In this document: positions 344 to 42,011 of the stretch, piece by piece
Numbering within the stretch: position 1 is the first letter of the stretch
Layout of the letters: the number at the start of each line of letters is the position of its first letter
Source of the DNA: Macrostomum lignano
Lineage: Eukaryota
Assembly: GCA_002269645.1 (NCBI GenBank)
Contig: NIVC01001925.1
Coordinates: 124,001-188,000 of the forward strand
Direction: 5' to 3'
DNA: 64,000 nt
Made by a program: the position numbers and the translations under genes
The notes under the pieces: model-generated
What the model was told of the DNA's origin: nothing
What the model saw: only the letters and a program-made list of their open reading frames with translations
The model's database searches: none

Positions 344-6477
<6,134 letters not shown>

Positions 6478-8704: not shown

Positions 8705-9975
8705 CTGTCAGGTGGAAAAAAGCAGCATCACAGGGCACGCTTCAGAGCCTGGGCGCGAACAAAGTGCCGCGTTAGTAATCCGCTCGTCGCTGATCTTAAA
8801 GGCGGCGCGCAGCAGGTCAGCGTGCGCCGCGTTGACTTGCTGTTCGAGCGAATCCGTCAGCGTCCAGGTCTCGGCGTTGTACAACAGGACAGTCTCGACC
8901 ACCGCCTGGAACAGCGCCGCCCTCTGGCGGTCAGGTTGGCCACCCTCACAGAGCGAAAGGCAGCCCAAGCGAGCCCGCGGCGACGCCGCAGATCTTCGCG
9001 GACGTCAGGTACCAGACCGCCGAGGTAGACGAACTACTGACAGCGCGGAAGCTCCGTTACCTGCCCGCCAGCGCCTCGGCAGAAAATTGCGGCCTCGATG
9101 TCGCCCGGCCCGCAGAGCACAACGGTTTTCTTCGTGTTCACCACCAGGCCGATGCTCGCTGCAGCGCTATCCAGCTTGTCCAGCTGGCGCTGCATGGGCG
9201 CCCTCTACGGTCGAGGACGGCAGGGCGAGGTCATCGGCGTAGCCAAACACGCTGAGCCGCAATTCTCCGGTTGACGTCGACCCACGCGTCGCCGCAGTAG
9301 GAAGCCGTCTTCGTCGGTAGGAAGAGCAGTTCGTAGCACCCAGTCAAGCACCAGGACGAACAGGAACGGCGCTATAGTGTCCCCCTGGAGCACCCCGGAC
9401 CGGGATGTCTCGAAGGAGTCCGACAGGCCATCCGGCGTCATCACAGCTGTTCTCGTAGCACCGTACAATGCCATTATGGCGGAGATCAGCTGTTCTGGCA
9501 CATGGTACGCGCGGAGCACATGTGGGAACGCAGCCCTCGCAACCGAGTCGAATGCCTTCATGAAGTCAATGAAGACAACAATCAGGTCCAATTGGCGCGT
9601 GCGCGCCTCCTCGATGATTCGGCGAAGAGCCAGGATCTGCGGCACTGTGCCACGGTGGGGCCGAAACCCGTTCTGCTCAGGTCGCAGGTAGGGATCTAGC
9701 ACGGGTTGCAACCGCGATAGCAGCATCCGGTTGAACAACTTTGCAGCACAGGATTGCATGCAGATGCCTCGGTGCTCTTCTAGCCGTGTAGTGCCCGGCT
9801 TCTTTGGAATGGCGATGATGTGCGCCATGGTCCACTCGGTGGGTGCCACCTCACCGGAGAGGACGCGGTTCATCACACGGGCGACCTCACTGGCCACACA
9901 GTGGATGCGCAGCGCCTCGATGGGCACCTCGTCCGGACCCAGCGCCTTGCCGCCCGGCGTCTTCTGGGCGAGCAT
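8705..9975 (-). mobile_element. Non-LTR retrotransposon (RTE-like) reverse transcriptase fragment, frameshifted and truncated
   Basis: RT motifs EQNGFR, FIDFMKAFDSV and GVLQGDTIAPFLF. GYADDLAL lies in a shifted frame at about 9225-9250. Downstream VLLYNAETWTL. No endonuclease domain or TSD seen. Confidence 0.9.
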
Positions 9976-10891
9976 TACGAGTTACGACTTCAGCCATGGT
10001 GACTGGTGCAACGTTAAAATCTAATTAATATTAGATACTCGGATACCTAAGTTATAGTCTTTGCTAATACTCGGCCGGGGTTTCCGAACCCGATTCATTT
10101 TCTTAAATGAATATTCGATAAATTTAAGAAACTGCGAACAAAATTGCTAACTGAGAAAATATAGCAGCAACATCAGCTTTTTGTGGTACTGCACAAGTTT
10201 AGTAATGAGAAGATCCCAATGAAGCCCAGTATGATTGTATTTACACGAGGCGTATTGTAGTTCGTATTCGTAGATTTTCTTTACTCAATTTTGTCATTAA
10301 AAGAAATAATAACAAGAACTGTTGCTTTAATATTTTAGGTGAATACAAAAAACGCGCCACGCAGTTTTGAGGCTGCATAATGATGGCTGGTTTAGTGTCT
10401 GTATACTTGAAATAAAAAGACGGTGCAAGATTACTTAAACTGGTACTATACTTGCATTCATTACTACTATGAGTACCAGCCACTATACAACAGCAGGAGC
10501 TGATGGATGCTGATGCGATGATTACCAGAAAAGCCAACACATTTAATAATTGTAATAACCATAATAATATTATAGTAGTAGTATTAGTAGTATTAACAGT
10601 AAAACTGTGCACCAAATGCCCAACAGAGACGGGTTAAAATGCCAGTTAAATAATTACTTCAGATAAAAAATGCGTTTCATTAATTCGCTTACTAAATGAT
10701 ATAAACAATTTGGCTGGACTAATAACTAATTGAAAACTAATGATAATAAACAGAATAGTAAAAAATAATAGTGCAATCTGACATTAGAGAGATAAGAGAT
10801 GGAATTAAAACGCAAAATTATGTTTATAAAAATAAGTATTTACTAAGTGCATAAGCACGATTTCAAGGTGCTGAAATTACCGCCACAGAAT

Positions 10892-13800
10892 TCAAGCCTG
10901 ATTGGCTCCCAGCGGATTAGGAGCCGTCACGCGCCTGGCATAGCAACCGGAGTTGAGCCAGTGAGCAGCCCTGGCCACCTGCTCAGGGTCGATGGTGACA
11001 CTCTTTGTGCAGTTGTCAGTCTTGTAGATGCCCACCAGCCTATCGGACAGCTCGAACATGTTGTTGCGCAGGCTGATCACAATGAACTGCGCATTGCGGG
11101 CGCAACGTTTGATGTAGTTGGCCACGATTGACACGTTTTTAAAGTCCAAAGCGGCGTCGATCTCGTCCATGAAGTACAGCGGAGTTGGCTTGTAGTGATG
11201 CAGCGCGAACACCAGCGCCAGGGAGCTCAGCGTCTTCTCACCGCCGCTCAGGTTGCCGATGGATTTCCAGCTCTTTTTCGGCGGCCGCACGGAGAACACC
11301 ACGCCTTCGGTGAACGGGTCCAGCGAGTCCACCAGCTCCAGCTCCGCGTCTCCGCCGATGGTGATCATCTGGCAGACGGGGGGATTAAATTATGAGCAAT
11401 TAAGGACAGTGGTGGGAGTGAGGAGTAGCCTTTTTTAAAGCAATGCCTACAGTGTCACTTCCAAGGGCTAAATACAATAATTATAAACAAAGGCATCTGT
11501 GAAAGCATCTTAGTCAATAAAGAATAAGAATTGGCAAAGAAAAATCCGGGCAATCAGATACACAGAAATTCGGGCTACCCCTCAAAAGTCGGGCATTCTG
11601 GTCATTTCCCTTTCGAATTCGGGCCTCACTCCCACCACTGATTAACAGGGAAAGACAGAAGAAGCAGAGAGCAATGCCGCAGCACCTGGTACATCTCCTT
11701 GAGCTTGCCGGTGATGATCCGGAAGCCGCTCATGAACTCGGTCAGGCGGGCGTGCCGCCACTCCTCGTGCAGGCGGCGCTGCTCGTCGCGCACGGTGGTG
11801 ACCCGATTCAGCTCGCCCACCTTGGCCAGGTAGGCGGCCTCCTTCTGCCTGTACTCGTCCAGGGCGCTCATGTCCGGCTGCATTCGGCCGACCTCGTCCT
11901 CGAGCTGCTGAATCTGCGTGCGCAGGCCGCTGTTGCGCAGCTCGTCAAGCTCGGCATCGGGCAGGGTGGGCAGCTTCCACATGTCCTCCACTGAGAAGCG
12001 GGGCCGCTGCTGCCGCTCAGCCGCTGCCGCCTCTGCCGACTGCTTCTGCCTCTTCTGCTTCTCAGCTCTGCGCTTCTGCTTCTTCGACAGTTTCTTTCCT
12101 CTGCGCTTCTCCTTCTGCTGCTGTCCCGGCTTCGAGCTTTGAACGCCCTCGTCTGTGCGTCTTCGCTTGGACTTCGGCGGCTCGTCCCCAGACTCCACCG
12201 GCTCCGACTTCACCGCGTCCGCCGCGTCCTCATCCTCAGCCTCGTCGCCACCGTCGGCGGGCACTTCCGGTTCCGCTTCGGGATTTTCTTCTTCTTCTTC
12301 CATGGCTGCATCATTGTCTGCTTCCTCTTTATCGTCTTCTTCATGAGCAGAGCCGGAAGCTGCAACAGGCACCAGCTGCATCTGTTGCTCCACTTGTTCT
12401 TCATCATCAGCCGGCTCTGCTGCCTCATCTTTGTTGCTTTGATCTTCATCGGCATCACTGCCGTCCACCTCCATTGCGGCGTGTTCTTCATTCTCCTCAG
12501 CCTCCTCAGCCTCAGACTCATCCCCGTCTTCATCAGCTGACTCGTCATCCTCCTCATCTTCGTCGCTTTCCTCTTCCTCCTGACTGGAAGCTGCGGCCGC
12601 GGCAGCAGCGGCCTCGGCCTCCTCCCGTCTGACGCGCTCTCGCTCAGCTTCCTCAGCTTCCTCTTCGTCATCCTGAATCCGGTGCAGCTGCAGCTGTTGC
12701 AGCTCGCGCTCCCAGCCGCGCCGTTTCCTCTCGTGCTCCTCGATGACGCCAACCACCGACTGCAGTTTGTGGCGCAGATCGACCTCGAGCTTGCGCAGCG
12801 ACTGCTCCTCCTTCTCCAGCTCTTCCAGCTCCGCTTTCATGCTGTCCACTTTCTCCTGCCATTTCTTCACTTCCTCCTGGGCCGCCTTGTGCCGGTTCAT
12901 CAGGTCGCGGCACTCGCCCTCCAGCTGGTTCATGCGGTCGCCAATGGTTGCTAGGCGGGTTTTGCACTCCTCCTTTTCCGTTTCAAGGCGAGCCAGGCGT
13001 TCTTCGGATTCGCGCACCTGGAATGCGTTCGAGTGTTTTATTTAATGAATTTCACTTCAAACAGGTACGCATCTTATCTGCAGTAAAAATTAATATTTTC
13101 CATCGATTTTTGCACCTTTCGTTCCGCAGTGCTGGCTGCCACCTTAACCTTGGTGGACAGAGCCTTCTGCTTCTTTATCTCGGCAAGAACGGCGTCTAAC
13201 CGGCTTTGAATGACCTGAAAGTTGAAACAGAATGCGACGATTAATAAAAATGGACCAATGAGTTTGGATTTAGGAGGCTGGCTCAGCAACTGGGGATCTG
13301 GGAGGCTGGCCTAGCAACTGGGGATCTGGGAGGCTGGCCTAGCAACTGAGGATCTGGGAGGCTGGCCTAGCAACTGGGGATCTGGGAGACTGGCCCAGCA
13401 ACTGAGGATCTGGGAGACTGGCCCAGCAACTGAAGATCTGGGAGGCTGGCCCAGCAACTGAGGATCTAGGAGGCTGGCCTAGCAACTGAGGATCTGGGAG
13501 ACTGGCCTGGCAACTGGGGATCTGGGAGGCTGGCCCAGCAACTGAGGATCTGAGAGGCTGGCCCAGCAACTGAGGATCTGAGAGGCTGGCCCAGCAACTG
13601 AGGATCTGGGAGACTGGCCCAGCAACTGGGGATCTGGGAGGCTGGCCCAGCAACTGAGGATCTGAGAGGCTGGCCCAGCAACTGAGGATCTAAGAGGCTG
13701 GCCCAGCAACTGACGATCTGAGAGGCTGGCCCAGCAACTGAGGATCTAAGAGGCTGGCCCAGCAACTGAGGATCTGAGAGGCCGGCCCAGCAACTGAGGA

Positions 13801-16800
13801 TCTGAGAGGCTGGCCCAGCAACTGAGGATCTGGGAGGCTGGCCCAGCAACTGAGGATCTGGGAGGCTGGCCCAGTAACTGAGGATCTGGGAGGCTGGCCT
13901 GGCAACTGGGGATCTGGGAGGCTGGCCCAGCAACTGAGGATCTGGGAGACTGGCCCAGCAACTGAGGATCTGGGAGGCTGGCCTGGCAACTGGGGATCTG
14001 GGAGGCTGGCCTGGCAACTGGGGATCTGGGAGGCTGGCCCAGCAACTGAGGATCTGGGAGGCTGGCCTGGCAACTGGGGATCTGGGAGGCTGGCCCAGCA
14101 ACTGAGGATTTGGAGCCGCTGATTCTCACCTGCAGCCTGGCGCCGCCGACCTCCATGATGCGGCTGTCCAGCTGGGCCACCTCGGTCTCGGCTTTGCCAG
14201 CCGCATCGCTGCTGGTTTTCTGCTCAGCTTCGGCGGTCTCCAGCCGCTGCCGCAGTTTGTCCAGCGCCTTGGCGTCCGGCTCCGCTTCGGCCGCGCGCCG
14301 TTCAGCGTCGGCCAGGACTTCGCGCGCCGCTCGACGCCGTTCGCCTAGACGGGCGACTTCGCGCTCGACAGCGTCGGAATTGCGCGCCAGCTGTCGCAGA
14401 TCCCGCTCCAAGCCGGCGATGGTTTCGCCTAAACGGGCCCGCTCGTCTCGCAGGCCGTTGAGCTGGGCGGTCAGGTCCGCCAGGCGCTTCTCGGCCTCCT
14501 GGGCGGACTCCTCGCCGCCTGAGCCGGCCGCGGCGGCCATGGCGGAGCCGCCGACTGTGGAGGCGTCCAAGTTGACGCGGGTGCCGATGCGGCCTCTGCG
14601 GATTTTGTGTTGGTAAACGGCGGGAGTAAACTATTACTAAAAGTGATTCGTCAGCTAATTAGAGTTGTACTTTTATTACACACCTTGTCGGCCGGCCACC
14701 GCCGCTCATTGTTCCGGACAGTTCGATAAGCCCGCCCTGCTCGGACACGACCCGGTATCTGGGCGTACCGTAGGCCACCCGGGTGGCCTCGTCCAGATCC
14801 TTGGCAACCAGGGTGTCGCGGATGGCATAATAAAACGCATTTCGAACCTTGGGATCGGGCACCTGCAGCAGGTCGAATAGGCGGGGAATCGGCGCGTTGC
14901 AGCGCTTGGAAGACTCGGCGGCCCACTGCTCCATCTTGTCCAGGGCGATGAACGTGGCCGTGCCGATTCGCTGCTCCTTGAGAAACCTTACGCAGGCCTC
15001 GCCTGTGGCGATCGTGTCCACCACGATGTCGTCTAGGGGACCGCATGCCGTACTCATGGCCACGTCGTAGCTGCCGGCGGGATGGATTGTGGGGGGATTG
15101 TGGCTGAGCGATAATGGGGATCTGGGATGTTTGTTCATGGGGATCTGGGATGTTTGTTCATGGGGATCTGGGATGTTTGTTCATGGGGATCTGGGATGTT
15201 TGTTCATGGGGATCTGGTATGTTTGTTCATGGGGATCTGGGATGTTTGTTTATGGGGATCTGGGAGGGTTGTTCATGGGGATCTGGGAGGGTTGTTCATG
15301 GGGATCTGGGAGGGTTGTGGCTCATCATGGGGATCTGGGAGGGTTGTGGCTCAGCATGGGGATCTGGGAGGGTTGTGACTCATCATGGGGATCTGGGAGG
15401 GTTGTGGCTCATTATGGGGATCTGGGAGGGTTGTGACTCATCATGGGGATCTGGGAGGGTTGTGACTCATCATGGGGATCTGGGAGGGTTGTGACTCATC
15501 ATGGGGATCTGGGAGGGTTGTGGCTCATTATGGGGATCTGGGAGGGTTGTGGCTCAGCATGGGGATCTGGGAGGGTTGTGACTCATCATGGGGATCTGGG
15601 AGGGTTGTGGCTCATTATGGGGATCTGGGAGGGTTGTGGCTCAGCAAGGGGATCTAGGAGGTTGTGGCTTTTATTCACTGATGAAACTCCTCACCGCTCA
15701 TCGATGGCGCCCAGGTCGCCCAGCCTGCCGCGCACTCCGGTGAATCTGCCGCGCTTCTTCTGCTCCAGCAGAGCCTGCAGCACCCGGCTCTGGCTGCGCT
15801 GCTCCAGCTGCCGTCTAGCTTCATCAACTCGCACCCGAAGCCCGCGCGCCTCTTCAGCTAAGCCAGCCTCCCGCTGCTGCAGGGCAGCCTCATCTCGCCG
15901 AGCACGTTCCAGACTCTTCTGCATCTCGGGAGTCTCCTTGGCGGCCCGATCTCTGATGGCGGTCTTCTCGGCCAGGGCCCGTTCCACCCCGTCGGCATCC
16001 TGCTTCGCGGCATCCAGGCGCTGCAAAGCTCGGGTCTGGCCGCTCAGGAGGATGTCCAGCTCCGTGCGGGCCATGTCTCTGGCTGACCGCTTGGCGTTGG
16101 CGTCTTTCTGCAGGTCTGCCAGCTGGCGCTCGGCGATGACCTTCTCGGCTCGGAGATCTTTGGTCTCCGCCTCGATGGCGTTGAGGGCCGTTTGCCTGCG
16201 AGGGTTTGCAGGCAGTGCAGACTTGAAGGTGAAAATATGCAGGTACTACTTCAAGTAGGAGGAGCAAGAATAACACTTCGCTCCAGTGTGATAAAAAGCG
16301 AATATCTCAGTGATTTAGTAATAATAATTGATTGCACCTGCCCCGATTGGGCCAGATTTAGGGATGATTCTCATGCTGATTTAGGGATGATTCTCTTGCT
16401 GATTTAGGGATGATTCTCTTGCTGATTTAGGGATGATTCTCATGCTGATTTAGAGATGATTCTCATGCTGATTTAGGGATGATTCTCATGCTGATTTAGA
16501 GATGATTCTCATGCTGATTTAGAGATGATTCTCACGCTGATTCAGCTCACCTATTGGCCTCCTCTTCCACTCGCTGCTTCTCCAACTCGACCAGTTTCTC
16601 AGCCAGCTCAGCCAGTCGCTTCTCCGCATCCTCGGGAGCCCGCTTCAGCTCCTCGATCTTGCTGGCCTCCTCCTCAGCCAGGCGCACAGTCTTCTTACCC
16701 TGCGCTTTCATCCGCTTGTACTCTTCGCGCAGACTGGCGTCTTCCACCTCCAGGGCGGTGAATTTCTCCTTAGTAACCGTATAGATCGTCTGCTGCTCCT

Positions 16801-18155
16801 GGTAGGCCTTCACAATTTCTTTGTTCTCTTCAACTTTGCGTTTAGATTGCTGCTTGGCTTCCTGCAGTTTGGCCAGTGCCGCGTCCAGCTCACTCTGGCG
16901 CTGCTCCTGCTCACCTCGCATGCTGTCGATGGTGGCGGCGCATTCGCGGCGATAGATTTGAAACAGGATGTTCTTCTTGCTCACAATCTGATTGCACAGG
17001 CGCAGGTATTGCAGGGCTTTGTCACGCTCGCCTTGAAGATCCGCTTTCTGCTTCTCTACGGCCTTCACCTGTGAATTGTGAATGCGTTCTGGTTTATGAG
17101 TACCTAATTAACAGGGAGTAGGTTGTGAGTAGCTAATTAACAGGGATTAGGTTGTGAGTAGCTAATTAACAGGTGTAGGTTATGAGTAGCTAATTAACAG
17201 GTGTAGGATATGAGTAGCTAATTAACAGGTGTAGGTTATGAGTAGCTAATTAACAGGTGTAGGTTATGAGTAGCTAATTAACAGGGAGTAGGTTGTGAGT
17301 ACCTAATTAACAGGGTGTAGGTTGTGAGTAGCTAATTAACAGGTGTAGGTTATGAGTAGCTAACTAACAGGTGTAGGTTATGAGTAGCTAATTAACAGGT
17401 GTAGGTTATGAGTAGCTAATTAACATGTGTAGGTTATGAGTAGCTAATTAACAGGTGTAGGTTGTGAGTAGCTAATTAACATGTGTAGGTTATGAGTAGC
17501 TAATTAACAGGTGTAGGTTATGAGTAGCTAATTAACAGGTGTAGGTTATGAGTAGCTAATTAACAGGTGTAGGTTATGAGTAGCTAATTAACAGGTGTAG
17601 GTTGTGAGTAGCTAATTAACAGGTGTAGGTTGTGAGTAGCTATTTAACAGGGAGTAGGTTATGAGTAGCTTATAAACAGAGAGTGTCATTACCTGGTTGA
17701 CCTTCTCCAGTCTGAGGTCATTAAGCGCATCGATGCGTCTGACAATTCTAGTGAGTGGATTTTTAAAACGCGAACTGCCGATGATGTCCTCGAGGTACTC
17801 CAGCAGGCCTTCTTCGTGCTCGTTCGGGGCGATGGGCTTCATTAGTGAGATCTGCTCCACTTCGCCCTGGATTGTTGCATTAGTGATTAAACTTACGAAT
17901 ATGGCTTATAGGGGTTTATGGCTTATGGCTTATGGGGTTTATGGCTTAAAAACTTTAGCACTGCAACTAGTTATTGAAAATCCTGTGAGAATATCTGTTT
18001 GTTAAACCGAATATCTATTAGGATATATTCATTCATCTATGCGCAAAAATGTCTGTATCTATCCAGGGCCTGTCTGTCTGTGTTGCCTGCCTGTCTGTCT
18101 GTCTGTCTGCCTGTCTGTCTGTCTGTCTGCCTGTCTGTCTGTCTATCCGCCTGCC

Positions 18156-18216
<61 letters not shown>

Positions 18217-20405
18217 GCCTGCCTGTCTGTCTGTCTGTCTGTCTGCCTGCCTGTCTGTCTGTCGGTCTGCCTGTCTGTCTGCCTGTCTGTCTGCCTGTAT
18301 GTATGTCCAAGCCAGCAGACCTGCAGGATGAGGAAGCGGTTGTGAGTGAGGTCGATCCCCACTCGCAAGAGCAGCTCGGCCACTTTCTTATACTCGTGCC
18401 GCCGCCCATTGACAGTGTAGTAGGAGGCGTTGTCCTTGAAGGCGGTCCTGGCCACGCTGAACTGCGAGCCTTCGACAATGTCGTAGCCGCCGTCTTCTCG
18501 ATCCACCACGCGCTGGAAGTGGATCTCCACGGTGCAGCTGTCGATGGCGGCGAAGTTCTCGCTGGAGTGAATCAAGGAAGACAGCTTCTTGGAGCGGATC
18601 TTCGAGGCGCGGTAGCCGAACACGAACAGCATGGAGTCGATGACGTTGGACTTGCCGCTGCCGTTGGGGCCGACAATGGCGGTGAAGTTCTGGTGGAACG
18701 GGCCGAGTATTCGCTCACCGGCGTAGGATTTGAAATTGCGGTTCACAATCTGGCTGATCATGAGGCGGGCTCGGCCCTGCGGATGGGGAAACGGCATCGC
18801 AGCATTGATCACGGAACTCTGGATTGCAGGGGATTCTTGGAGTGGGAGAGCTACTAGGATTTTGGGGATTGGGATTCTTGGAGTGGGAGAGCTACTGGGA
18901 TTTTGGGGATTGGGATTCTTGGAGTGGGCGAGCTACTGGGATTTTGGGGATTGGGATTCTTGGAGTGGGAGAGCTACTGGGATTTTGGGGATTGGGATTC
19001 TTGGAGTGGGAGAGCTACTGGGATTTTGGGGATTGGGATTCTTGGAGTGGGCGAGCTACTGGGATTTTGGGGATTGGGATTCTTGGAGTGGGAGAGCTAC
19101 TGGGATTTTGGGGATTGGGATTCTTGGAGTGGGAGAGCTACTTGGATTTTGGGGATTGGGATTCTTGGAGTGGGAGAGCTACTGGGGATTTTGGGGATTG
19201 GGATTCTTGGAGTGGGAGAGCTACTGGGGATTTTGGGGATTGGGATTCTTGGAGTGGGAGAGCTACTGGGGATTTTGGGGATTGGGATTCTTGGAGTGGG
19301 AGAGCTACTGGGGATTTTGGGGATTGGGATTCTTGGAGTGGGAGAGCTACTGGGGATTTTGGGGATTGGGATTCTTGGAGTGGGAGAGCTACTGGGGATT
19401 TTGGGGATTGGGATTCTTGGAGTGGGAGAGCTACTGGGGATTTTGGGGATTGGGATTCTTGGAGTGGGAGAGCTACTGGGGATTTTGGGGATTGGGATTC
19501 TTGGAGTGGGAGAGCTACAGGGGATTTTGGGGATTGGGATTCTTGGAGTGGGAGAGCTACTGGCGATTTTGGGGATATTTTTGGGATTGGGATTCTTGGA
19601 GTGGGAAAGCTACTGGCGATTTTGGGGATATTTTTGGGATTGGGATTCTTGGAGTGGGAAAGCTACTGGGATTTTGGGGATTGGGATTCTTGGAGTGGGA
19701 GAGCTACTGGGGATTTTGGGGATTGGGATTCTTGGAGTGGGACAGCTACTGGCGATTTTGGGGATATTTTTGGGATTGGGATTCTTGTAGTGGGAGAGCT
19801 ACTGGGATTTTGGGGATTGGGATTCTTGGAGTGGGAGAGCTACTGGGATTTTGGGGATATTTCTGGGATTGGGATTCTTGGAGTGGGAGAGCTACTGGGA
19901 TTTTGGGGATTGGGATTCTTGGAGTGGGAGAGCTACTGGGATTTTGGGGATTGGGATTCTTGGAGTGGGAGAGCTACTTGGATTTTGGGGATTGGAATTC
20001 TTGGAGTGGGAAAGCTACTGGGATTTTGGGAATTGGGATTCTTGGAGTGGGAGAGCTACTGGGATTTTGAGAATATTTTGGGGATTGAGATTCTTGGAGT
20101 TTTGGGAGTTAACTGCGATCCAAAAATTGGGATGCTGAGCTGAGACTTCTGATATAGTGAGAACTGTGATATACAAACTTCTGAACTGAATGAATGCTGA
20201 ACTTCTGATATAGCAAGGCATATGCAAAATCATATTCTCTCAAATTACCAAAACGCACCTGCTCTTCTCCAGTCATAGGCAAATCTGCAGGCTTAGGCGG
20301 AATCACCAGCGGCGCCAGGTTCATGAGGTCCTGCTCAGTTTCCAATCGTTCATCATCGCTGCCGCCCCCGGCATGATGATCTGGGTCATCTGCTTGGTCG
20401 GTCAT
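10892..20405 (-). CDS. SMC4: Structural maintenance of chromosomes protein 4 (condensin subunit), 10 exons, ~1518 aa
   Basis: Exons 20259-20405, 18321-18776, 17693-17866, 16551-17068, 15695-16195, 14684-15070, 14130-14595, 13116-13214, 11686-13017, 10892-11368, all phase-consistent. Walker A GPNGSGKSN, hinge GRLGDLGAID...YDVAMSTACG, signature LSGGEKTLSSLAL, Walker B YFMDEIDAALD and the SMC4-type GGDAELELVDSLDPF are present. Confidence 0.96.
13272..14110. repeat. 28-bp minisatellite in SMC4 intron
   Basis: ggaggctggcccagcaactgaggatctg units inside intron 13215-14129. Confidence 0.95.
15110..15665. repeat. ~24-29-bp minisatellite in SMC4 intron
   Basis: ggggatctgggatgtttgttcat grading into ggggatctgggagggttgtggctcatcat, inside intron 15071-15694. 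Confidence 0.93.
16360..16542. repeat. 23-bp minisatellite in SMC4 intron
   Basis: gatgattctcatgctgatttagg units inside intron 16196-16550. Confidence 0.92.
17095..17670. repeat. 28-bp minisatellite in SMC4 intron
   Basis: gagtagctaattaacaggtgtaggttat units inside intron 17069-17692. Confidence 0.95.
18068..18300. repeat. Degenerate (TCTG/CCTG)n microsatellite in SMC4 intron
   Basis: Visible tetramer run inside intron 17867-18320. Confidence 0.93.
18826..20100. repeat. ~41-bp G-run-rich minisatellite in SMC4 intron 1
   Basis: gggattttggggattgggattcttggagtgggagagctact units inside intron 18777-20258. Confidence 0.95.
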
Positions 20406-21864: not shown

Positions 21865-22218
21865 TCTTTGCTAGGAATGCAAATTTTGCATTATTGTTTT
21901 TGTAGGTATAATTAAAGTTTGTTTAAAATGAAAATATTTGTAATATTTTAAATACTTTTCGTACAAAAGCCTTTCTCAGGAACCTTTACTTGTGAAAACT
22001 GAATGACCTTTTTTAGGAAGAATTTTTTGGCATTATTATTAGGTTCTGATGACTATGCTGAATAGGCCTACCTGGGTTTACCAACTTAATTTTTATAATT
22101 TCCTTAGCAGCTTAGCTATAAAATTTTTGCTAACCGACTTGGATTGACGGCGTTCAAAGAATGACCGGTTATTCATCATTAAGCTTAGCCGTAGCCAAAT
22201 TGGACGGACGGGTCACTG

Positions 22219-25200
22219 CATGCAGGGATTCCCCGAGCGATATTCAAGATCGATATTCGGAAGTAACAAAAATCTTTGCTTTTAAAGCACCAAACGCTAT
22301 GATTTTTTACAGAAAAAACATCACCCACGAGATAAACCTACTTGAAAAAAATTACGGCTACAGATAGAAAGGATTTTTTACAATTTGCAAAAAACTGATG
22401 TTCCTATCTCCGCAATGTATTAGATTGATATTCGATTTCGAGTACTTCTGCTTGCTCTCTGTCGCTGAAAATTGACATGCAGGACTTCACCCAGACACTA
22501 AGCGATTATCATAACTCAAACCGAACTCAAAGCTTCATGCTCGAGAACTATTCGAGAAAAACTGATGTTCCTATCTCCACAATGTATTAGATTGATATTC
22601 GATTTCGAGTACTTCTGCTTGCTCTCTGTCGCTGAAAATTGACATGCAGGACTTCACCCAGACACTAAGCGATTATCATAACTCAAACCGAACTCAAAGC
22701 TTCATGCTCGAGAACTATTCGAGAAAAACTGATGTTCCTATCTCCACAATGCATTAGATTGATATTCGATTTCGAGTACTTCTGCTTGCTCTCTGTCGCT
22801 GAAAATTGACATGCAGGACTTCACCCAGACACTAAGCGATTATCATAACTCAAACCGAACTCAAAGCTTCATGCTCGAGAACTATTCGAGAAAAACTGAT
22901 GTTCCTATCTCCGCAATGTATTAGATTGATATTCGATTTCGAGTACTTCTGCTTGCTCTCTGTCGCTGAAAATTGACATGCAGGACTTCACCCAGACACT
23001 AAGCGATTATCATAACTCAAACCGAACTCAAAGCTTCATGCTCGAGAACTATTCGAGAAAAACTGATGTTCCTATCTCCGCAATGTATTAGATTGATATT
23101 CGATTTCGAGTACTTCTGCTTGCTCTCTGTCGCTGAAAATTGACATGCAGGACTTCACCCAGACACTAAGCGATTATCATAACTCAAACCGAACTCAAAG
23201 CTTCATGCTGGAGAACTATTCGAGAAAAACTGATGTTCCTATCTCCGCAATGTATTAGATTGATATTCGATTTCGAGTACTTCTGCTTGCTCTCTGTCGC
23301 TGAAAATTGACATGCAGGACTTCACCCAGACACTAAGCGATTATCATAACTCAAACCGAACTCAAAGCTTCATGCTCGAGAACTATTTGAGAGATGAGGT
23401 AAGCCACTTTTTGTCCCTGTGTCACATCTTAATCTTTGTGGCATAGTAGCCATTTGTAAATTTTATTTCATAGCTACGAAATGCCTCGAAATTTGGACGA
23501 TTTACAGATCGATAGCGTTGTGACTGATGGAATAAAAAAGTTTGCAACGCCTCGTAGTTTTAAAGCTTCGGCTCCCATCTTCTGCAACATCGCAGAACGA
23601 CTAAATTTGAGGAATACCATACACAATCGAGCCATGATGTTCCACTGGATTCGCAAAAGAACAAAAGAAAAAAATGAATTGACCGGATTGACTGGAACTT
23701 TCTCTGAGGGCCGCATTCCTTTGATTAGTACTCCCCCTAGACCTTCTGAGGGTCACTCTCCTCCGGTTAGCACTCCCCCTAGACCTTCGGAGGGTCAACC
23801 TCCTCCGGTTAGCACTCCCCCTAGACCTTCGGAGGGTCAACCTCCTCCGGTTAGCACTCCCCCTAGACCTTCGGAGGGTCAACCTCCTCCGGTTAGCACT
23901 CCCCCTAGACCTTCTGAGGGTCAACCTCCTCCGGTTAGCACTCCCCCTAGACCTTCGGAGGGTCAACCTCCTCCGGTTAGCACTCCCCCTAGACCTTCTG
24001 AGGGTCACCCTCCTCCGGTTAGCACTCCCCTTAGTCCTGAAACTCATTCTATTGTATCGACTGATGTATTGTCACTCGATGTCAAGCAGAAGAGCCGCCA
24101 AAAGCAGACGGTGCAGCAACAATTGATTGGGTGAGTTGTAAAATTCTTGTACGCATAAACACCTCTGTGCCAAATATCCATACACATGTACTCACTTTAC
24201 CTTTACTTCTTGTACATGCACTACGGTAGATCGAGTGCTCATCCTGTCTTGACTGGATCCACTGCGTCTGTGCATCCACAACGCAAGAAGAGGAAAACTT
24301 CTGCTGCTCGACCTGCATCAATTTACTCAGCTGATCGATTACCATACAAGTCAATGGCCTAACTTTGTGCAGCATTAAATATGCATGACTATTAGACTAT
24401 AGTCTAATGATTTAATTAAATGATAAGATTAAAGAGCTAATTGAGTTTCATCTAAATTATAATTTATTCAGTGCAAATAATCGCTTAGTGTCTGGGTGAA
24501 GTCCTGCATGTCAATTTTCAGCGACAGAGAGCAAGCAGAAGTACTCGAAATCGAATATCAATCTAATACATTGCGGAGATAGGAACATCAGTTTTTCTCG
24601 AATAGTTCTCGAGCATGAAGCTTTGAGTTCGGTTTGAGTTATGATAATCGCTTAGTGTCTGGGTGAAGTCCTGCATGTCAATTTTCAGCGACAGAGAGCA
24701 AGCAGAAGTACTCGAAATCGAATATCAATCTAATACATTGCGGAGATAGGAACATCAGTTTTTCTCGAATAGTTCTCGAGCATGAAGCTTTGAGTTCGGT
24801 TTGAGTTATGATAATCGCTTAGTGTCTGGGTGAAGTCCTGCATGTCAATTTTCAGCGACAGAGAGCAAGCAGAAGTACTCGAAATCGAATATCAATCTAA
24901 TACATTGCGGAGATAGGAACATCAGTTTTTCTCGAATAGTTCTCGAGCATGAAGCTTTGAGTTCGGTTTGAGTTATGATAATCGCTTAGTGTCTGGGTGA
25001 AGTCCTGCATGTCAATTTTCAGCGACAGAGAGCAAGCAGAAGTACTCGAAATCGAATATCAATCTAATACATTGCGGAGATAGGAACATCAGTTTTTCTC
25101 GAATAGTTCTCGAGCATGAAGCTTTGAGTTCGGTTTGAGTTATGATAATCGCTTAGTGTCTGGGTGAAGTCCTGCATGTCAATTTTCAGTGACAGAGAGC

Positions 25201-25437
25201 AAGCAGAAGTACTCGAAATCGAATATCAATCTAATACATTGCGGAGATAGGAACATCAGTTTTTTGCAAATTGTAAAAAATCCTTTCTATCTGTAGCCGT
25301 AATTTTATTCAAGTCGGTTTTTCTCGTGGGTGATGTTTTTTCTGTAAAAAAAATCATAGCGTTTGGTGCTTTAAAAGCAAAGATTTTTGTTATTTCCGAA
25401 TATCGATCTTGAATATCGCTCGGGGAATCCCTGCATG
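22219..25437. mobile_element. Foldback-type DNA element: long inverted arms with 167-bp tandem units and 7-bp TSD GTCACTG
   Basis: Termini CATGCAGGGATTCCCCGAGCG...CGCTCGGGGAATCCCTGCATG. GTCACTG lies at 22212-22218 and 25438-25444. Left arm 22219-23393 has a ~175-bp outer part plus 6 units starting at 22394, 22561, 22728, 22895, 23062 and 23229. Right arm 24477-25437 has about 4.7 units, inverted. Confidence 0.9.
23394..24362 (+). CDS. Predicted three-exon ~264-aa protein inside the foldback element (HTH-like N-terminus, 7x Pro/Ser/Thr repeat, basic NLS)
   Basis: ATGAG|GTAAGC (23394-23398), TTTCATAG|C (23474-24130), GG|GTGAGT, ACGGTAG|A (24230-24362, TAA). Both introns keep the frame. No similarity to a transposase catalytic domain was recognised. 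Confidence 0.6.
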
Positions 25438-25672
25438 GTCACTGCACTGGACTATTAAATTGAATTTTATAGTTTAAATTAAATTAAATTTCGTATTTTG
25501 TTACAATTTTAACAAAACGATATTACTAACGAAAAAATTATATTGCGCATTTTCGGAATTTAACCAAATGATCCATCCTACTCGCAAATCTAAGCTACGC
25601 TGATCGTTTATAACTGGATAAAAACCTTCTATGCAAAATCTCTGAGAATCGCTATATAGAAACAATAGACTG

Positions 25673-29388: not shown

Positions 29389-30934
29389 CTAGCAATTTAA
29401 GCCCCCCGTTGGGGGGGCGCAAGAATGACGCCAAGTGGTTTTTATTTTGGCCAATGAGTAAAAACCTTACTTATTATTCAAAATCCATTAATCAAAACTT
29501 ACTTTTTCTCATTTTTGGCAATAATAAATTGCCATGAATCAAAACCTTCACCAGCCAAAGTTTCCTTCATCAGCCCAAAACCCTTTCTAATTCAGCAAAT
29601 AGTACTTATCCTTTCAAGCACAAACTCTTAGGGCATATCGTCATTGGCCTGGGCATATTCTGGTCCGCAGCAGGAGCTCAATATGCCATAAGCCTTGATG
29701 ACATCTCAATAATTTCCCCAGTAAACCTTGACAATTCAGCAATTCCCCCAGTAAGCCTTGAAATCTCAGTAATTCCTCCAGTAAGTCTTGACTTCTCACA
29801 ATTCCCCCAGTAGGCCTTGAAAACTCAGCAATTCCCCCAAGTAAGCCTTGACATCTCAGTAATTCCCCCATTAAGCCTTGAAAACTCAGCAATTCCACCC
29901 AGTAAGCCTTGAAATCTCAGTAATTCCTCCAGTAAGTCTTGACTTCTCACAATTCCCCCAGTAGGCCTTGACACTGTCCACGCTGTCCACTGAGCGATAC
30001 TCTCGCAGTTATACAGATTCACCGCGCCGACAATCAGCCTGTCTCTGCCGCTGCTCTTCCAGACGGGTAATCCGCTCAGCCTCGTCTTCAGCAGCGCGAA
30101 ACTCAGCCTGTCTCTGCCGCTGTTCCTCCAGACGGGCAATCCGCTCAGCCTCGTCTTCAGCAACGCGACACTCAGCCTGTCTCTGCCGCTGTTCCTCCAG
30201 ACGGGCAATCCGCTCAGCCTCGTCTTCAGCAACGCGACATTCAGCCTGTCTCTGCCGCTGTTCCTCCAGACGGGCAAACCGCTCAGCCTCGTCTTCAGCA
30301 ACGCGACATTCAGCCTGTCTCTGCCGCTGTTCCTCCAGACGGGCAAACCGCTCAGCCTCGTCTTCAGCAACGCGACATTCAGCCTGTCTCTGCCGCTGTT
30401 CCTCCAGACGGGCAAACCGCTCAGCCTCGTCTTCAACAGCGCGGCGCTCGGCGTCTCGCCGCCGCTGCTCTTCCAGACGGGCATCGCGCTCTCCAGCAGA
30501 CTCGGCCAGTCGTCTTTTCTTTGCGTCACGGCTTCTCTTCAAATGGCTTGCGCCACGGCGCACCATCATACAGTGGGGCTAAATAGATAAAGCACTATTA
30601 GAGGGTTCAAAAACCAAAGAAAAGAAAGAAGGAAAGGAAGCAGTGGGCTACATAAAAACCAAGCAGCCTACAGCTATTAGCATTATAATCTATGGCCAAA
30701 ACCGTTTGCAAGCTCTCACTGCCGAAAAAATACATTAGCGAGATGGGCAAAAACCTGTTTTCTGACAATTGAGAGGCCTCTTTAATTTGGATAGCTTATT
30801 AAAAATACGTGTACCGATTCCGGACAATTTGCCATCTAATGGTGCAAAAACGGAGAAAATCGGTCATTCCGTTCGCAAGATTTTCTGTTACAAGCAAACA
30901 AACAAACAAACAAACTCAACTTTAGTATATAAGA
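29389..30934 (-). mobile_element. Non-autonomous Helitron carrying a truncated STPR-repeat ORF
   Basis: Minus strand: 5' TCTTATATACTAAAGTTGAGTTTGTTTG at 30934; 3' hairpin CCCCCCCAACGGGGGG followed by TTAAATTGCTAG at 29389, then T. Confidence 0.75.
30009..30569 (-). CDS. STPR-like 23-aa repeat ORF (7 units), probably an N-terminal remnant of a Helitron protein
   Basis: Unit AEDEAERFARLEEQRQRQAECRV (69 bp) has the E-x3-ER-x2-RL spacing of STPR repeats. It is co-oriented with the Helitron and truncated at the 3' end. Confidence 0.55.
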   Translation of the reverse strand: MMVRRGASHLKRSRDAKKRRLAESAGERDARLEEQRRRDAERRAVEDEAERFARLEEQRQRQAECRVAEDEAERFARLEEQRQRQAECRVAEDEAERFARLEEQRQRQAECRVAEDEAERIARLEEQRQRQAECRVAEDEAERIARLEEQRQRQAEFRAAEDEAERITRLEEQRQRQADCRRGESV

Positions 30935-33082
30935 CTAGCAATTTAAGCCCCCCGTTGGGGGGGCGCAAAAATGACGCCAAGTGGTTTTTATTTTGGCCAA
31001 TGAGTAATAACCTTACTTATTATTCAAAATCCAATCAAAACTTACTTTTTCAAATTTTTGGCAAAAATAAATTGCCATGAATCAAAACCTTCACCAGCCA
31101 AAGTTTCCTTCATCAGCCCAAAACCCTTTCTCATTCAACAAATAGTACTTATCCTTTCAAGCACAAACTCTTAGGGCATATCGTCATTGGCCTGGGCATA
31201 TTCTGGTCCGCAGCAGGAGCTCAATATGCCATAAGCCTTGATAACATCTCAATAATTTCCCCAGTAAGCCTTGACATCTCAGCAATTCCTCTCAGTAAGC
31301 CTTGACAATTCAGCAATTCCCCCCAGTAAACCTTGACAATTCAGCAATTCCCCCAGTAAGCCTTGACATCTCAGCAATTCCCCCCAGTAAGCCTTGAAAT
31401 CTCAGTAACTCCCCAGTAAGTCTCGAATCTCAGTTATTCTTCCAGTAAGTCTTGAAGTCTAAGCAATTTCCCCAGTAAGCCTTGACATCTCAGCAATTCA
31501 TCTAAGAAAGCATTGAAATCTCAGCAATTCCCCCAGTAAGCCTTGAAGTCTCAGTAATTCCCCAGTAAGTCTCGAATCTCAGTAATTCCTCCAGTAAGTC
31601 TTGACTTCTCACAATTCCCCCAGTAGGCCTTGACAACTCAGCAATTCCCCCAGTAAACCTTGAAATCTCAGAAATTCCCCCAGTAAGCCTTGAAGTCTCA
31701 GCAATTCCCCCCAGTAAGCCTTGACAACTCAGCAATTCCCCCCAGTAAGCCTTGAAATCTCAGTAATTCCCCAGTAAGTCTCGAATCTCAGTAATTCCTC
31801 CAGTAAGTCTGGACTTCTCACAATTCCCCCAGTAGGCCTTGACAACTCAGCAATTCCCCCAAGTAAGCCTTCACATCTCAGCAATTCCCCCAGTAAGCCT
31901 TGACAACTCAGCAATTCCCCCAGTAAACCTTGAAATCTCAGAAATTCCCCCAGTAAGCCTTGAAGTCTCAGCAATTCCCCCAGTAAACATTGAAATCTCA
32001 GAAATTCCCCCAGTAAGCCTTGAAGTCTCAGCAATTCCCCCAGTAAACCTTGAAATCTCAGAAATTCCCCCAGTAAGCCTTGAAGTCTCAGCAATTCCCC
32101 CAGTAAACCTTGAAATCTCAGAAATTCCCCCAGTAAGCCTTGAAGTCTCAGCAATTCTCCCAGTAGGCCTTGACAACTCAGCAATTCCCCCAGTAGGCCT
32201 TGACAACTCAGCAATTCCCCCAAGTAAGCCTTCACATCTCAGCAATTCCCCCAGTAAGCCTTGACAACTCAGCAATTCATCCAAGAAAGCCTTGAAATCT
32301 CAGCAATTTCCTGAGTAAGCCTTGAAATCTCAGAAATTCCCCCAGTAAGCCTTGAAGTCTCAGAAATTTCCCCAGTAAGCCTCGACATCGCAGCAATTCC
32401 CCCAAGTAAGCCTTCACATCTCAGTAATTTCCTCAGTAAGCCTTGACATCTCAGTAATTCCCCCAGTAAGCCTTGACATCTCAGCAATTCCTCCCAGTTA
32501 GCCTTTGGCTGGTGAAGGTTTTGATTCATGGCAATTTATTTTTGCCAAAAATGAGAAAAAGTAAGTTTTGATTAATGGATTTTGAATAATAAGTAAGGTT
32601 ATTACTCATTGGCCAAAATAAAAACCACTTGGCGTCATTCTTGCGTCCCCCAACGGGGGGCTTAAATTGCTAGTAGTTGCTTTTAATCAAAAAATGTTCG
32701 ATTAGTCCAGGCACAAGCTACAAATAAATGAAAATTTATTTAATATATTTTTATCTCCCACGTGCATACTCTGAAGCTTGCGAATAATTTAATTATTTAT
32801 AGCTCGCAGCATCAGCTCAAGAAGTTAAAGTTTAGTCTATGGCCATAGACGTATTATTATTTTTCGAGCTCTCACTGCGAGAAAAATACACTAATTAGAT
32901 AGGGAAAATACAGTTTTTTTAATATTTAAGACCTTTAGAATTGAAGCAAATAAAAGAAATGTTAACCATACAATCCTTGGCTGAGTTGCAATGTTTTGGC
33001 GAAAACGCGATCGAAATTGGTCATGAATTGCAGTCTGTAGAGCGTTTTACACGGACATAGATTAGAGATTTAGTATATAAGA
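30935..33082 (-). mobile_element. Second non-autonomous Helitron-like unit with a ~30-bp minisatellite and an inverted extra 3' terminus
   Basis: 3' hairpin+CTAG at 30935 directly abuts the first Helitron's TC. 5' A|TCTTATATACTAAA at 33082. The cagcaattcccccagtaagccttgaaatct array spans ~31240-32500. An inverted terminal ~170 bp lies at 32503-32673. Confidence 0.65.
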
Positions 33083-41900: not shown

Positions 41901-42011
41901 AAACGAGGTTTATCGTCCTTCTAAGGACTTGAGCAGTCCTTGATTCGAAAGTGTAGAAAGAAAAGCTAAACACAAAATTGCGGTTAACATTGAGTCAACT
42001 AGACAAAGACG

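What the first reader, a model, noticed from the sequence alone, without database searches (positions are those of the whole stretch)
22219..25437. Foldback element with 167-bp satellite arms carrying an intact, spliced non-transposase gene
Seen: a 3219-bp unit bounded by a 7-bp TSD (GTCACTG) and CATG-starting inverted arms of ~1.18 kb and ~0.96 kb. Each arm has a ~175-bp outer segment (only a handful of mismatches between arms) plus near-identical 167-bp tandem units. Immediately after the last left-arm unit sits an ATG, and two GT-AG introns (23399-23473, 24131-24229) join three exons in frame into ~264 aa. The protein has an N-terminal helical segment (IAERLNL...MMFHWIRKRTK, loosely HTH/homeodomain-like), 7x STPPRPSEGQPPPV and a C-terminal QRKKRK. 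Established: long tandem-repeat TIRs with a 7-bp TSD are features of Galileo/P-superfamily foldback elements, and FB-NOF is a precedent for cargo genes. Inference: this is a young non-autonomous foldback whose cargo encodes a nuclear DNA-binding accessory protein, with the tandem arm serving as promoter/5'UTR.
Basis: partly seen in the sequence, partly recalled or inferred. Interest (0 to 1): 0.75.

Follow-up and report, generated by a model that had tools for sequence, protein, structure and literature searches.

The report
Foldback transposon with a broken PHD-finger gene
This is a real but ordinary non-autonomous "foldback" DNA transposon in an animal genome, and its supposed intact cargo gene is more likely a frameshifted remnant, because a PHD zinc finger is still recognisable in a different reading frame from the long ORF.

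Summary
The sequence observations hold. The unit is 3219 bp (22219-25437), flanked by the direct repeat GTCACTG. Its inverted arms are 1173 and 961 bp. Each arm has a ~172-bp outer segment followed by 6.0 or 4.7 near-identical 167-bp tandem units.

The foldback-transposon reading is well supported, although this is the only copy I could see.

The "intact spliced non-transposase gene" is only partly supported:
- A 217-codon ORF exists and is longer than chance (p ≈ 0.003).
- Half of it is a 42-bp minisatellite.
- Its unique N-terminus has no credible relative among 1.84 billion representative proteins and is predicted to be one long helix, not a helix-turn-helix.

All 27 PDB hits are PHD fingers; the best is KDM5B PHD3 (E = 0.0017), and that alignment crosses the splice junction. 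This frame is closed by stop codons upstream.

The superfamily is unresolved. The TSD length fits P/Galileo. The PHD, subterminal satellite and internal minisatellite fit Rehavkus, but Rehavkus makes 9-bp TSDs.

The parts
22212..22218 (.). Left target-site duplication GTCACTG
   Evidence: Read directly from the sequence. It is identical to 25438-25444. It can be read as 8 bp (GGTCACTG) if the right end is shifted by one base.
22219..22389 (+). Left arm, outer (flanking) domain. It starts with the terminus CATGCAGGGATTCCCCGAGCG.
   Evidence: It aligns to the reverse complement of the right outer domain with 4 mismatches and a 2-nt indel. The 27-nt terminus occurs only at the two ends of the element.
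22390..23391 (+). Left arm, tandem array of 6.0 units of 167 bp
   Evidence: TRF reports period 167, 6.0 copies and 99% matches; the units are listed. Each unit holds CATGCAGG, the terminal 8-mer, in the same orientation as the terminus. By my own hand alignment of the sequences, the match extends to about 15 of 21 bases.
23399..23473 (+). Putative intron 1 (GTAAGC...TTTCATAG), unverified
   Evidence: Consensus-like donor and acceptor are read from the sequence. No independent support; it needs RNA-seq.
23481..24134 (+). 217-codon ORF, made of 81 unique N-terminal codons, the 42-bp repeat region and 31 further codons
   Evidence: Listed. An ORF of 217 codons or more arose in 0.26% of 5000 shuffles that kept the repeat intact. 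No credible homologue was found. The codon-usage score is weak, -0.12 per codon against +0.77 for a held-out SMC4 exon.
23725..24038 (+). 42-bp (14-codon) minisatellite, 7.5 copies, inside the ORF
   Evidence: TRF; the copies are listed. The repeat is free of stop codons in 3 of the 6 reading frames. It therefore lengthens any ORF that enters it in one of those frames.
24069..24130 (+). PHD-finger relic, first half (CIVTRCQAEEPPKADGAATIDW). It is in a different frame from the 217-codon ORF and is closed upstream by TGA at 24066-24068.
   Evidence: Frame reading. PDB alignments to EBS and SHL cover query residues 6-51.
24131..24229 (+). Intron 2 (GTGAGT...GGTAG), 99 nt, phase 0 in the PHD frame
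   Evidence: The KDM5B PHD3 alignment runs through the junction (tidw|iecs against VDWVQCD). Read unspliced, the PHD frame meets a TAG at the end of the interval.
24230..24334 (+). PHD-finger relic, second half (IECSSCLDWIHCVCASTTQEEENFCCSTCINLLS, then a stop codon)
   Evidence: The pattern C-x2-C-x4-5-H-x2-C-x10-46-C-x2-C occurs once in all six frames of the window and never in 200 shuffled windows. All 27 PDB hits at E <= 10 are PHD fingers, the best at E = 0.0017. The Pfam PHD model gives E = 0.058 and 13.9 bits, below its cut-off of 24.
24230..24362 (+). It is probably an out-of-frame reading.
   Evidence: The same search that returned 27 PHD hits for the other frame found no PDB hit at E <= 10 for this frame.
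24477..25264 (-). Right arm, tandem array of 4.7 units of 167 bp. The innermost unit is cut off after about 120 bp.
   Evidence: TRF, unit listing, inverted-repeat pairs I1-I12.
25265..25437 (-). Right arm, outer (flanking) domain, ending in ...CCCTGCATG
25438..25444 (.). Right target-site duplication GTCACTG

Best explanation
This is a single insertion of a non-autonomous foldback-type cut-and-paste DNA transposon.

**Shown**
- Two inverted arms, each an outer terminal domain followed by an array of 167-bp units.
- A 7-bp (possibly 8-bp) target-site duplication.
- A 1.1-kb middle domain.

**Inferred mechanism**
- The element is moved in trans by a DDE-type transposase encoded elsewhere, which makes cuts staggered by 7-8 bp.
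- The transposase recognises the terminal ~30 bp. The terminus-like CATGCAGG motif, present once in every 167-bp unit, probably acts as a reiterated secondary binding site. This was shown experimentally for the Galileo THAP domain and has been proposed for other foldback elements.
- The arrays grow and shrink independently by unequal exchange (6.0 against 4.7 units) and stay homogeneous.

**The middle domain**
- It is not an intact cargo gene. It is the rearranged remnant of the family's own intron-containing gene.
- It keeps a genuine N-terminal coding stretch, an in-frame 42-bp minisatellite, and the last two exons, which once encoded a C-terminal PHD finger.
- The PHD frame is now shifted relative to the ORF and blocked by stop codons.
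- An internal deletion of a longer gene (possibly a PHD-bearing transposase of the Rehavkus kind) or a frameshift in a small accessory gene would both give this picture.
For: - **Architecture and TSD:**
- **Terminal 8-mer in every unit:** CATGCAGG recurs once per unit, in the orientation of the terminus. My estimate, not a tool result, is a chance of about 0.005 that this particular 8-mer falls in a 167-bp unit.
- **ORF longer than chance:** 0.26% of shuffles reach 217 codons.
- **PHD finger in another frame across the same intron:** the regex hits once in the window and never in 200 shuffles. All 27 PDB hits are PHD fingers, the best is E = 0.0017 and it spans the junction. PHD is the only Pfam hit, at E = 0.058.
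- **PHD frame is blocked:** it is closed by TGA at 24066-24068 and by a TAG in every 42-bp repeat, and has no ATG.
- **No transposase remnant:** no frame of the middle domain matches a transposase family.
- **Gene 3' end:** ATTAAA motifs lie downstream of both stop codons, just inside the right arm (read).
- **Literature:** the foldback architecture of flanking domain, tandem-repeat domain and middle domain is described in PMC4079207. Transposase binding sites in Galileo tandem repeats are shown in PMC3688188. Rehavkus has inverted termini with subterminal tandem repeats (PMC12581902), plus a PHD finger and a minisatellite near the 3' TIR (PMC6446971).
Against: - Only one copy is visible, so mobility is inferred from structure and the TSD alone.
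- No relative of the terminus, the unit, the ORF or the PHD peptide was found in any searchable collection. None of the DNA collections I could search with the terminus or the unit holds animal genomes.
- The PHD match is below Pfam's gathering score. The single-sequence AlphaFold model was poor (pLDDT 61) and gave no meaningful structural match.
- For a single frameshift to restore an intact N-terminus-repeat-PHD protein, it would have to fall within about 3 nt just after the TGA at 24066-24068.
Confidence: 0.6

Rival explanations
1. The middle domain is an intact three-exon cargo gene for a 264-aa nuclear DNA-binding accessory protein. It would have a helical HTH-like N-terminus, a Pro-rich linker and a QRKKRK nuclear localisation signal, and would be expressed from the left arm.
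For: - The frame is open over all three exons.
- The ORF is longer than chance.
- Splice sites are consensus-like.
- Residues 28-71 are predicted helical with pLDDT about 80.
Against: - There is no homologue of the N-terminus among 1.84 billion representative proteins. The only two hits are mutually inconsistent repeat proteins, a bacterial FN3 array and a TPR array.
- There is no Pfam or PDB match.
- The model is one long helix, not an HTH.
- Codon usage is unlike the window's host exons.
- Half of the ORF is a 14-codon minisatellite.
Confidence: 0.12
2. The PHD exons, and perhaps the whole middle domain, are a fragment of a host gene captured at the DNA level, as in Pack-MULE-type transduplication. 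The source could be the 3' end of a gene that ends in a PHD finger, such as a KDM5- or TAF3-like gene. In that case they are not the element's own gene.
For: - The relic keeps an intron, as DNA-level captures do.
- The best PDB matches are the PHD3 fingers of KDM5B and KDM5A. From my own knowledge, those fingers sit at the C-terminal end of the host proteins.
- The frame does not match the rest of the ORF, which is typical of chimeric captured fragments.
Against: - By my count from the alignment, identity to KDM5B PHD3 is only about 38%.
- The relic sits together with a stop codon, ATTAAA motifs and an AT-rich tail directly against the inner edge of the right arm. That is where the 3' end of an element's own gene would lie.
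- A PHD finger is a described feature of Rehavkus foldback transposases (PMC6446971).
- No parental gene could be searched for.
Confidence: 0.2
3. This is not a mobile element. It is a local inverted duplication of a 167-bp satellite array, or an assembly artefact, that happens to be flanked by a 7-bp repeat.
For: Only one copy is seen. Tandem repeats are abundant throughout this window.
Against: - The inverted similarity ends sharply at the same base on both sides, and an exact 7-bp direct repeat lies immediately outside.
- The arms are of unequal length around a unique 1.1-kb centre. In my judgement this does not look like a palindromic assembly artefact.
- The terminal 8-mer is reiterated inside the units.
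Confidence: 0.03

Closest known systems
Galileo (foldback-like member of the P superfamily, Drosophila)
   Same: - TIRs of about 1 kb with internal tandem repeats whose number differs between the two arms.
- 7-bp TSD, occasionally 8 bp.
- Many non-autonomous copies consisting of two TIRs.
- Transposase-binding sites reiterated in the tandem repeats (PMC3573991, PMC4168063, PMC3688188).
   Different: - No THAP or P-type transposase remnant is present.
- The TSD GTCACTG matches the Galileo consensus GTANTAC only at GT.
- A PHD finger is not among the four P-element transposase domains listed in PMC3688188.
- From my own knowledge, the CATG terminus resembles the P element; I did not test it against Galileo termini.
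Rehavkus (MULE-related foldback DNA transposons of arthropods and annelids)
   Same: - Inverted termini made of TIRs plus a variable number of subterminal, satellite-like tandem repeats (PMC12581902).
- A PHD finger in the encoded protein, and a minisatellite in the C-terminal region ahead of the 3' TIR (PMC6446971).
   Different: - Five of the six Rehavkus elements tabulated in that paper have 9-bp TSDs and the sixth has none given. Here the TSD is 7 bp, at most 8.
- Those elements are 4.9-18.5 kb long and encode a DDE transposase. This copy is 3.2 kb and has no DDE remnant, so homology could not be tested.
- Here the minisatellite lies upstream of the PHD relic, and within the long ORF.
Tetris and FB (classical Drosophila foldback elements; FB-NOF)
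   Same: The same three-part plan: a flanking domain, an outer domain of tandem repeats (about 220 bp in Tetris) and a middle domain. They are non-autonomous, and the repeats can seed satellite DNA (PMC4079207).
   Different: Tetris TSDs are 8-10 bp and it has been assigned to Mutator. Its middle domain has no coding capacity. Here the middle domain keeps an ORF and a PHD relic.
Internally deleted P elements such as KP (concept only; from my own knowledge)
   Same: A deletion derivative that keeps the 5' and 3' ends of the element's gene and may still produce a truncated protein.
   Different: No homology to these elements. No evidence that this ORF is expressed or acts on transposition.

Membership tests
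Foldback-type class II (TIR) transposon (structural class) | Long inverted arms built from a terminal domain plus internal tandem repeats, around a middle domain | tested here: met
   The arms are 1173 and 961 bp, with 6.0 and 4.7 units of 167 bp, around a 1085-bp middle domain.
Foldback-type class II (TIR) transposon (structural class) | Target-site duplication directly outside the termini | tested here: met
   GTCACTG on both sides.
Foldback-type class II (TIR) transposon (structural class) | Multiple dispersed copies or empty-site alleles (proof of mobility) | not testable with these tools
   There is one copy in the window. Metagenome, prokaryote-genome and viral scans returned nothing. 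No animal-genome collection was available for DNA searches.
P superfamily / Galileo | TSD of 7-8 bp | tested here: met
   7 bp, readable as 8 bp. Galileo makes 7-bp and occasionally 8-bp TSDs (PMC4168063).
P superfamily / Galileo | Target consensus GTANTAC (palindromic) | tested here: not met
   GTCACTG shares only the GT. This is one insertion, so it is weak evidence.
P superfamily / Galileo | THAP domain plus P-type transposase in the element or in an autonomous partner | tested here: inconclusive
   No THAP or transposase match in any frame of the middle domain. An autonomous partner could not be searched for.
Rehavkus (MULE-related) | Inverted termini made of TIRs plus subterminal tandem repeats | tested here: met
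   family description in PMC12581902.
Rehavkus (MULE-related) | PHD finger in the encoded protein | tested here: inconclusive
   A PHD relic is present. It is out of frame and not attached to any transposase domain. No Rehavkus PHD sequence was available to compare.
Rehavkus (MULE-related) | Minisatellite in the C-terminal region or ahead of the 3' TIR | tested here: met
   A 42-bp repeat, 7.5 copies, at 23725-24038. It lies upstream of the PHD relic.
Rehavkus (MULE-related) | 9-bp TSD | tested here: not met
   The flanks match over at most 8 bp. Five of the six tabulated Rehavkus elements have 9-bp TSDs; the sixth has none given.
Rehavkus (MULE-related) | MULE-type DDE transposase domain | not testable with these tools
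   This copy has no such domain, and no partner element is accessible.
PHD finger (Pfam PF00628) | C4HC3 ligand pattern with canonical spacing | tested here: met
   C-x4-C-x18-C-x2-C-x4-H-x2-C-x11-C-x2-C, read across the splice junction. The second-half pattern is unique in the window and absent from 200 shuffled windows.
PHD finger (Pfam PF00628) | Score at or above the Pfam gathering cut-off | tested here: not met
   13.9 bits against a cut-off of 24, E = 0.058.
PHD finger (Pfam PF00628) | Sequence similarity to solved PHD fingers | tested here: met
   All 27 hits are PHD fingers. The best is KDM5B PHD3, E = 0.0017. Both Trp residues of the DW..C and W.H motifs are aligned.

The most novel reading that the evidence does not exclude
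In intact copies elsewhere in this genome, the N-terminal helix, the Pro-rich repeats and the PHD finger may be joined in one frame. They would then form a small non-transposase protein carried by a foldback element. It would be a transposon-encoded chromatin reader of the H3K4me3-binding PHD type, with both cage tryptophans conserved in the alignment to KDM5B PHD3. Such a protein could steer insertion towards active promoters, or could act as a KP-like regulator of the family.
Probability: 0.12. Interest if true: 0.55.

Novelty: new member of a known kind. Interest (0 to 1): 0.3.

Why it matters
As it stands, this is a tidy example of a known phenomenon. Foldback transposons carry satellite-sized (about 170 bp) tandem repeats in their arms, and such repeats can seed satellite DNA and promote inversions.

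What this analysis adds is a correction. The apparent intact cargo gene hides a PHD finger in another frame. That links the element to PHD-bearing foldback families such as Rehavkus, and argues that the middle domain is the family's own decayed gene rather than cargo.

If in-frame copies exist, a transposon-borne histone-reader PHD would be a testable handle on how foldback elements choose their targets.

Tried and rejected
**Homologues of the 260-aa product (5.8 billion proteins).** 8000 word-sharing candidates, none at E <= 0.01. The Pro-rich repeat may have saturated the candidate list.

**Full HMMER scan of the 85-aa N-terminus (1.84 billion representatives).** Two hits. One is a bacterial protein with 14 FN3 repeats and the other a TPR-repeat protein. 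The scores come from summing weak stretches, and the two folds are incompatible with each other. I rejected both as spurious.

**PHD peptide against the 5.8-billion collection.** No candidates.

**Exact look-ups.** The 217-aa ORF and a 1119-aa neighbouring ORF are not on record.

**DNA scans for the terminus or the unit.** Nothing in metagenome, prokaryote-genome or viral contigs.

**Protein-guided metagenome scan.** One locus, L001, which matches only the Pro-rich repeat at 44% identity. I treated it as a low-complexity match and did not follow it.

**AlphaFold.**
- The 264-aa model has mean pLDDT 52, with one long helix and the rest disordered.
- The PHD peptide has pLDDT 61, and the Foldseek search against the PDB returned nothing meaningful. 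This is expected for a zinc finger folded without an alignment or metal.

**Pfam on frames of the middle domain.** The ORF-frame product and the other five frames gave no transposase remnant.

**Other negative checks.**
- The outer domain is not a diverged 167-bp unit: alignment score 34 against a shuffle mean of 31.5.
- The 167-bp unit has no unusual self-structure (z = +0.9).
- Rfam and tRNA scans of the window were empty.

**Source organism.** I could not identify it. The SMC4 N-terminus is at most 68% identical to any listed protein, with nematodes and vertebrates among the best hits.

**Rehavkus sequences.** The supplement of PMC6446971 holds only DDE-domain alignments, so no comparison with a Rehavkus PHD was possible.
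Full report
**1. The observation**

The region was read directly.
- The element runs from 22219 to 25437 (3219 bp).
- The heptamer GTCACTG lies immediately outside both ends, at 22212-22218 and 25438-25444.
- The first 27 nt, CATGCAGGGATTCCCCGAGCGATATTC, occur exactly twice in the 64-kb window, once at each end in inverted orientation. None is expected in shuffles.

Tandem Repeats Finder and the repeat finder give the arm structure.
- The left arm has a 171-bp outer domain and 6.0 units of 167 bp (22390-23391).
- The right arm has 4.7 units (24477-25264) and a ~173-bp outer domain.
- The two outer domains differ by four mismatches and one 2-nt indel.
- The 167-bp units are at least 99% identical, with a handful of private substitutions.
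- The innermost right-arm unit is cut off after about 120 bp, so the arms are unequal: 1173 and 961 bp.

The duplication could also be read as 8 bp (GGTCACTG) if the right end is moved by one base. It cannot be stretched to 9 bp. The element is the only copy in the window.

**2. Context**

The window is from an animal genome.
- SMC4 lies on the minus strand between about 10.9 and 18.8 kb.
- Further ORFs carry PLAT/LH2 repeats, an EF-hand and a weak C-type lectin match. There are also reverse-transcriptase and integrase fragments.
- Micro- and minisatellites are very abundant.
- I could not identify the species. The best SMC4 matches are only 65-68% identical.
- The element sits in an AT-rich intergenic stretch about 3.4 kb from the SMC4 5' end.

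**3. The arms**

The layout of outer flanking domain, tandem-repeat domain and middle domain is the textbook foldback layout described for FB, Galileo and Tetris (PMC4079207; PMC3573991).
- The outer domain is not simply a diverged unit: alignment score 34 against a shuffle mean of 31.5.
- The terminal 8-mer CATGCAGG does recur once in every unit, in the same orientation as the terminus. By my own hand alignment of the sequences, the similarity extends to about 15 of 21 bases.
- A second 8-mer, GATATTCG, is also shared between the outer domain and the units.
- In Galileo, the transposase THAP domain binds near the end and again inside the tandem repeats (PMC3688188). I therefore read the 167-bp units as reiterated secondary transposase-binding sites. 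This is inference, not shown here.
- The unit has no unusual self-structure.

**4. The "cargo"**

The unspliced ORF 23481-24134 has 217 codons.
- 105 of these codons are the 42-bp (14-codon) minisatellite. That repeat is free of stop codons in three of the six frames.
- Even allowing for this, an ORF this long arose in only 0.26% of 5000 shuffles that kept the repeat intact. The 81 unique N-terminal codons therefore probably are, or recently were, coding.

Beyond that, support is thin.
- There is no Pfam family.
- No homologue turned up among 5.8 billion proteins.
- An exhaustive HMMER scan of 1.84 billion representatives gave only two hits, a bacterial FN3-repeat protein and a TPR-repeat protein. 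Their scores come from summing weak stretches, and their folds exclude each other.
- There is no PDB relative.
- Codon usage is unlike the host exons in the window: -0.12 per codon against +0.77 for a held-out SMC4 exon. A transposon gene need not share host codon usage, so this is weak evidence.
- AlphaFold predicts a single long helix (residues 28-71, pLDDT about 80) and disorder elsewhere, with mean pLDDT 52. This is not a helix-turn-helix or homeodomain fold.

**5. A PHD finger in another frame**

They then read:

CIVTRCQAEEPPKADGAATIDW|IECSSCLDWIHCVCASTTQEEENFCCSTCINLLS, followed by a stop codon.

This is C-x4-C-x18-C-x2-C-x4-H-x2-C-x11-C-x2-C, the C4HC3 signature of a PHD finger. The intron is phase 0 in this frame.

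Tests:
- The second-half pattern alone occurs once in the six-frame translation of the whole window and never in 200 composition-preserving shuffles.
- A phmmer search of all PDB sequences returned 27 hits at E <= 10. Every one is a PHD finger: KDM5B and KDM5A PHD3, ASH1L, PHF13, PHF23, KDM7, EBS/SHL, PHF2/8, TAF3, BPTF, PHF20 and CXXC1.
- The best hit is KDM5B PHD3 at E = 0.0017. Its alignment runs straight through the exon junction (tidw|iecs against VDWVQCD) and keeps both tryptophans.
- PHD is the only Pfam family hit, but at 13.9 bits it is below the 24-bit cut-off.
- The structural test was uninformative: pLDDT 61 and no meaningful Foldseek match.

I take the PHD relic as real with about 85% confidence. 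It independently validates intron 2.

**6. Consequence for the gene model**

The PHD frame is closed immediately upstream by TGA at 24066-24068, by another TGA eight codons earlier, and by a TAG in every 42-bp repeat. It contains no ATG. In this copy, the part that looks truly coding at the 5' end and the part that looks truly coding at the 3' end are therefore in different frames.
- My rough estimate, not a tool result, is that about 3% of random sequences of this composition would stay open that long.

Two histories fit:
- an internal deletion of a longer gene that kept its 5' and 3' ends, the usual origin of non-autonomous elements;
- a small indel in a short N-terminus-repeat-PHD gene. That indel would have to fall within about 3 nt to leave the first cysteine pair intact.

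No transposase remnant is detectable in any frame. ATTAAA motifs and an AT-rich tail follow the stop codons directly inside the right arm. This is where the 3' end of an element's own gene would be, so I favour the element's own gene over a captured host fragment. The latter cannot be excluded.

**7. Which family?**

TSD length (7, possibly 8 bp) fits the P superfamily.
- Galileo makes 7-bp and occasionally 8-bp TSDs and has long TIRs with tandem repeats (PMC4168063).
- GTCACTG matches the Galileo consensus GTANTAC only at GT.
- There is no THAP or P-transposase remnant.
- A PHD finger is not among the four P-element transposase domains listed in PMC3688188.

Rehavkus matches on other grounds.
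- It is described as a foldback transposon with TIRs plus variable subterminal tandem repeats that behave as satellite DNA (PMC12581902).
- It also has a PHD finger and a minisatellite near the 3' TIR (PMC6446971).
- These are three qualitative matches. However, five of the six tabulated Rehavkus elements have 9-bp TSDs and the sixth has none given.
- No Rehavkus PHD or DDE sequence could be compared with this copy.

I therefore do not file the element under either family. It works like a foldback element, and its superfamily is open.

**8. Verdict**

This is a genuine, structurally intact foldback-type non-autonomous DNA transposon, probably a new family in an unidentified animal genome. The cargo-gene story is weakened.

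Interest is modest. It would rise if in-frame copies show that the family carries a histone-reader PHD protein.

Noticed in passing
window 41419-41949: A diverged inverted-repeat element of about 530 bp with arms of about 140 nt. Both arms contain TTCCTATCTCCGTAGTGTATT, which matches positions 12-32 of the 167-bp unit at 19 of 21 bases (BLAST E = 0.02). Relative to the terminus, the motif is in the opposite orientation to that in the foldback. By eye, its ends (TTCAAAGCAGGAACC...) resemble CATGCAGGGATTCC only faintly. It could be a distant relative recognised by the same transposase, or a chance match.
   Followed up: partly
window 29389-32674: Another element bounded by inverted repeats, about 3.3 kb with arms of about 170 nt. 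It encloses two arrays of a 30-bp minisatellite (29699-29973 and 31244-32505, both in the same orientation) and a 69-bp array (30028-30491). No clear TSD at the boundaries I examined.
   Followed up: partly
window 56249-57272: An inverted-repeat pair with 205-nt arms, 94% complementary, 614 nt apart. It looks MITE-like. No TSD at the reported arm ends.
   Followed up: no
window ~3200-6400: A microsatellite of about 3.2 kb, (GTCT)n, which reads as DRQT or VCLS repeats in the ORF list. Shorter copies of the same motif lie inside the SMC4 region near 18.0-18.3 kb. The whole window is unusually rich in minisatellites, for example at 13.4-14.1, 18.7-20.1, 33.6-34.3 and 59.5-62.5 kb.
   Followed up: no
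window ~10890-18810 (minus strand): An SMC4 (condensin subunit) gene in several large exons, with introns full of tandem repeats. Its N-terminal exon is at most 68% identical to any listed database protein, so the source species has no close relative among the proteins listed.
   Followed up: partly
window 9205-9975 (-) and 62815-63858 (-): Retroelement fragments. The first is a reverse-transcriptase ORF (RVT_1, E = 3e-19), which lies next to or within the SMC4 region. The second is an integrase ORF (rve plus Integrase_H2C2) at the window edge.
   Followed up: no
L001 4244-4477 (metagenome contig Ga0190269_10004600): The only metagenome locus returned for the ORF. It matches just the Pro-rich repeat (query residues 75-180, 44% identity). 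This looks like low-complexity similarity rather than a relative.
   Followed up: no
window 25180-25200 (outermost right-arm unit): The one private substitution in this unit turns GTCGCTG into GTCACTG, the same heptamer as the TSD. It lies 8 bp from the internal CATGCAGG motif. Probably coincidence.
   Followed up: no
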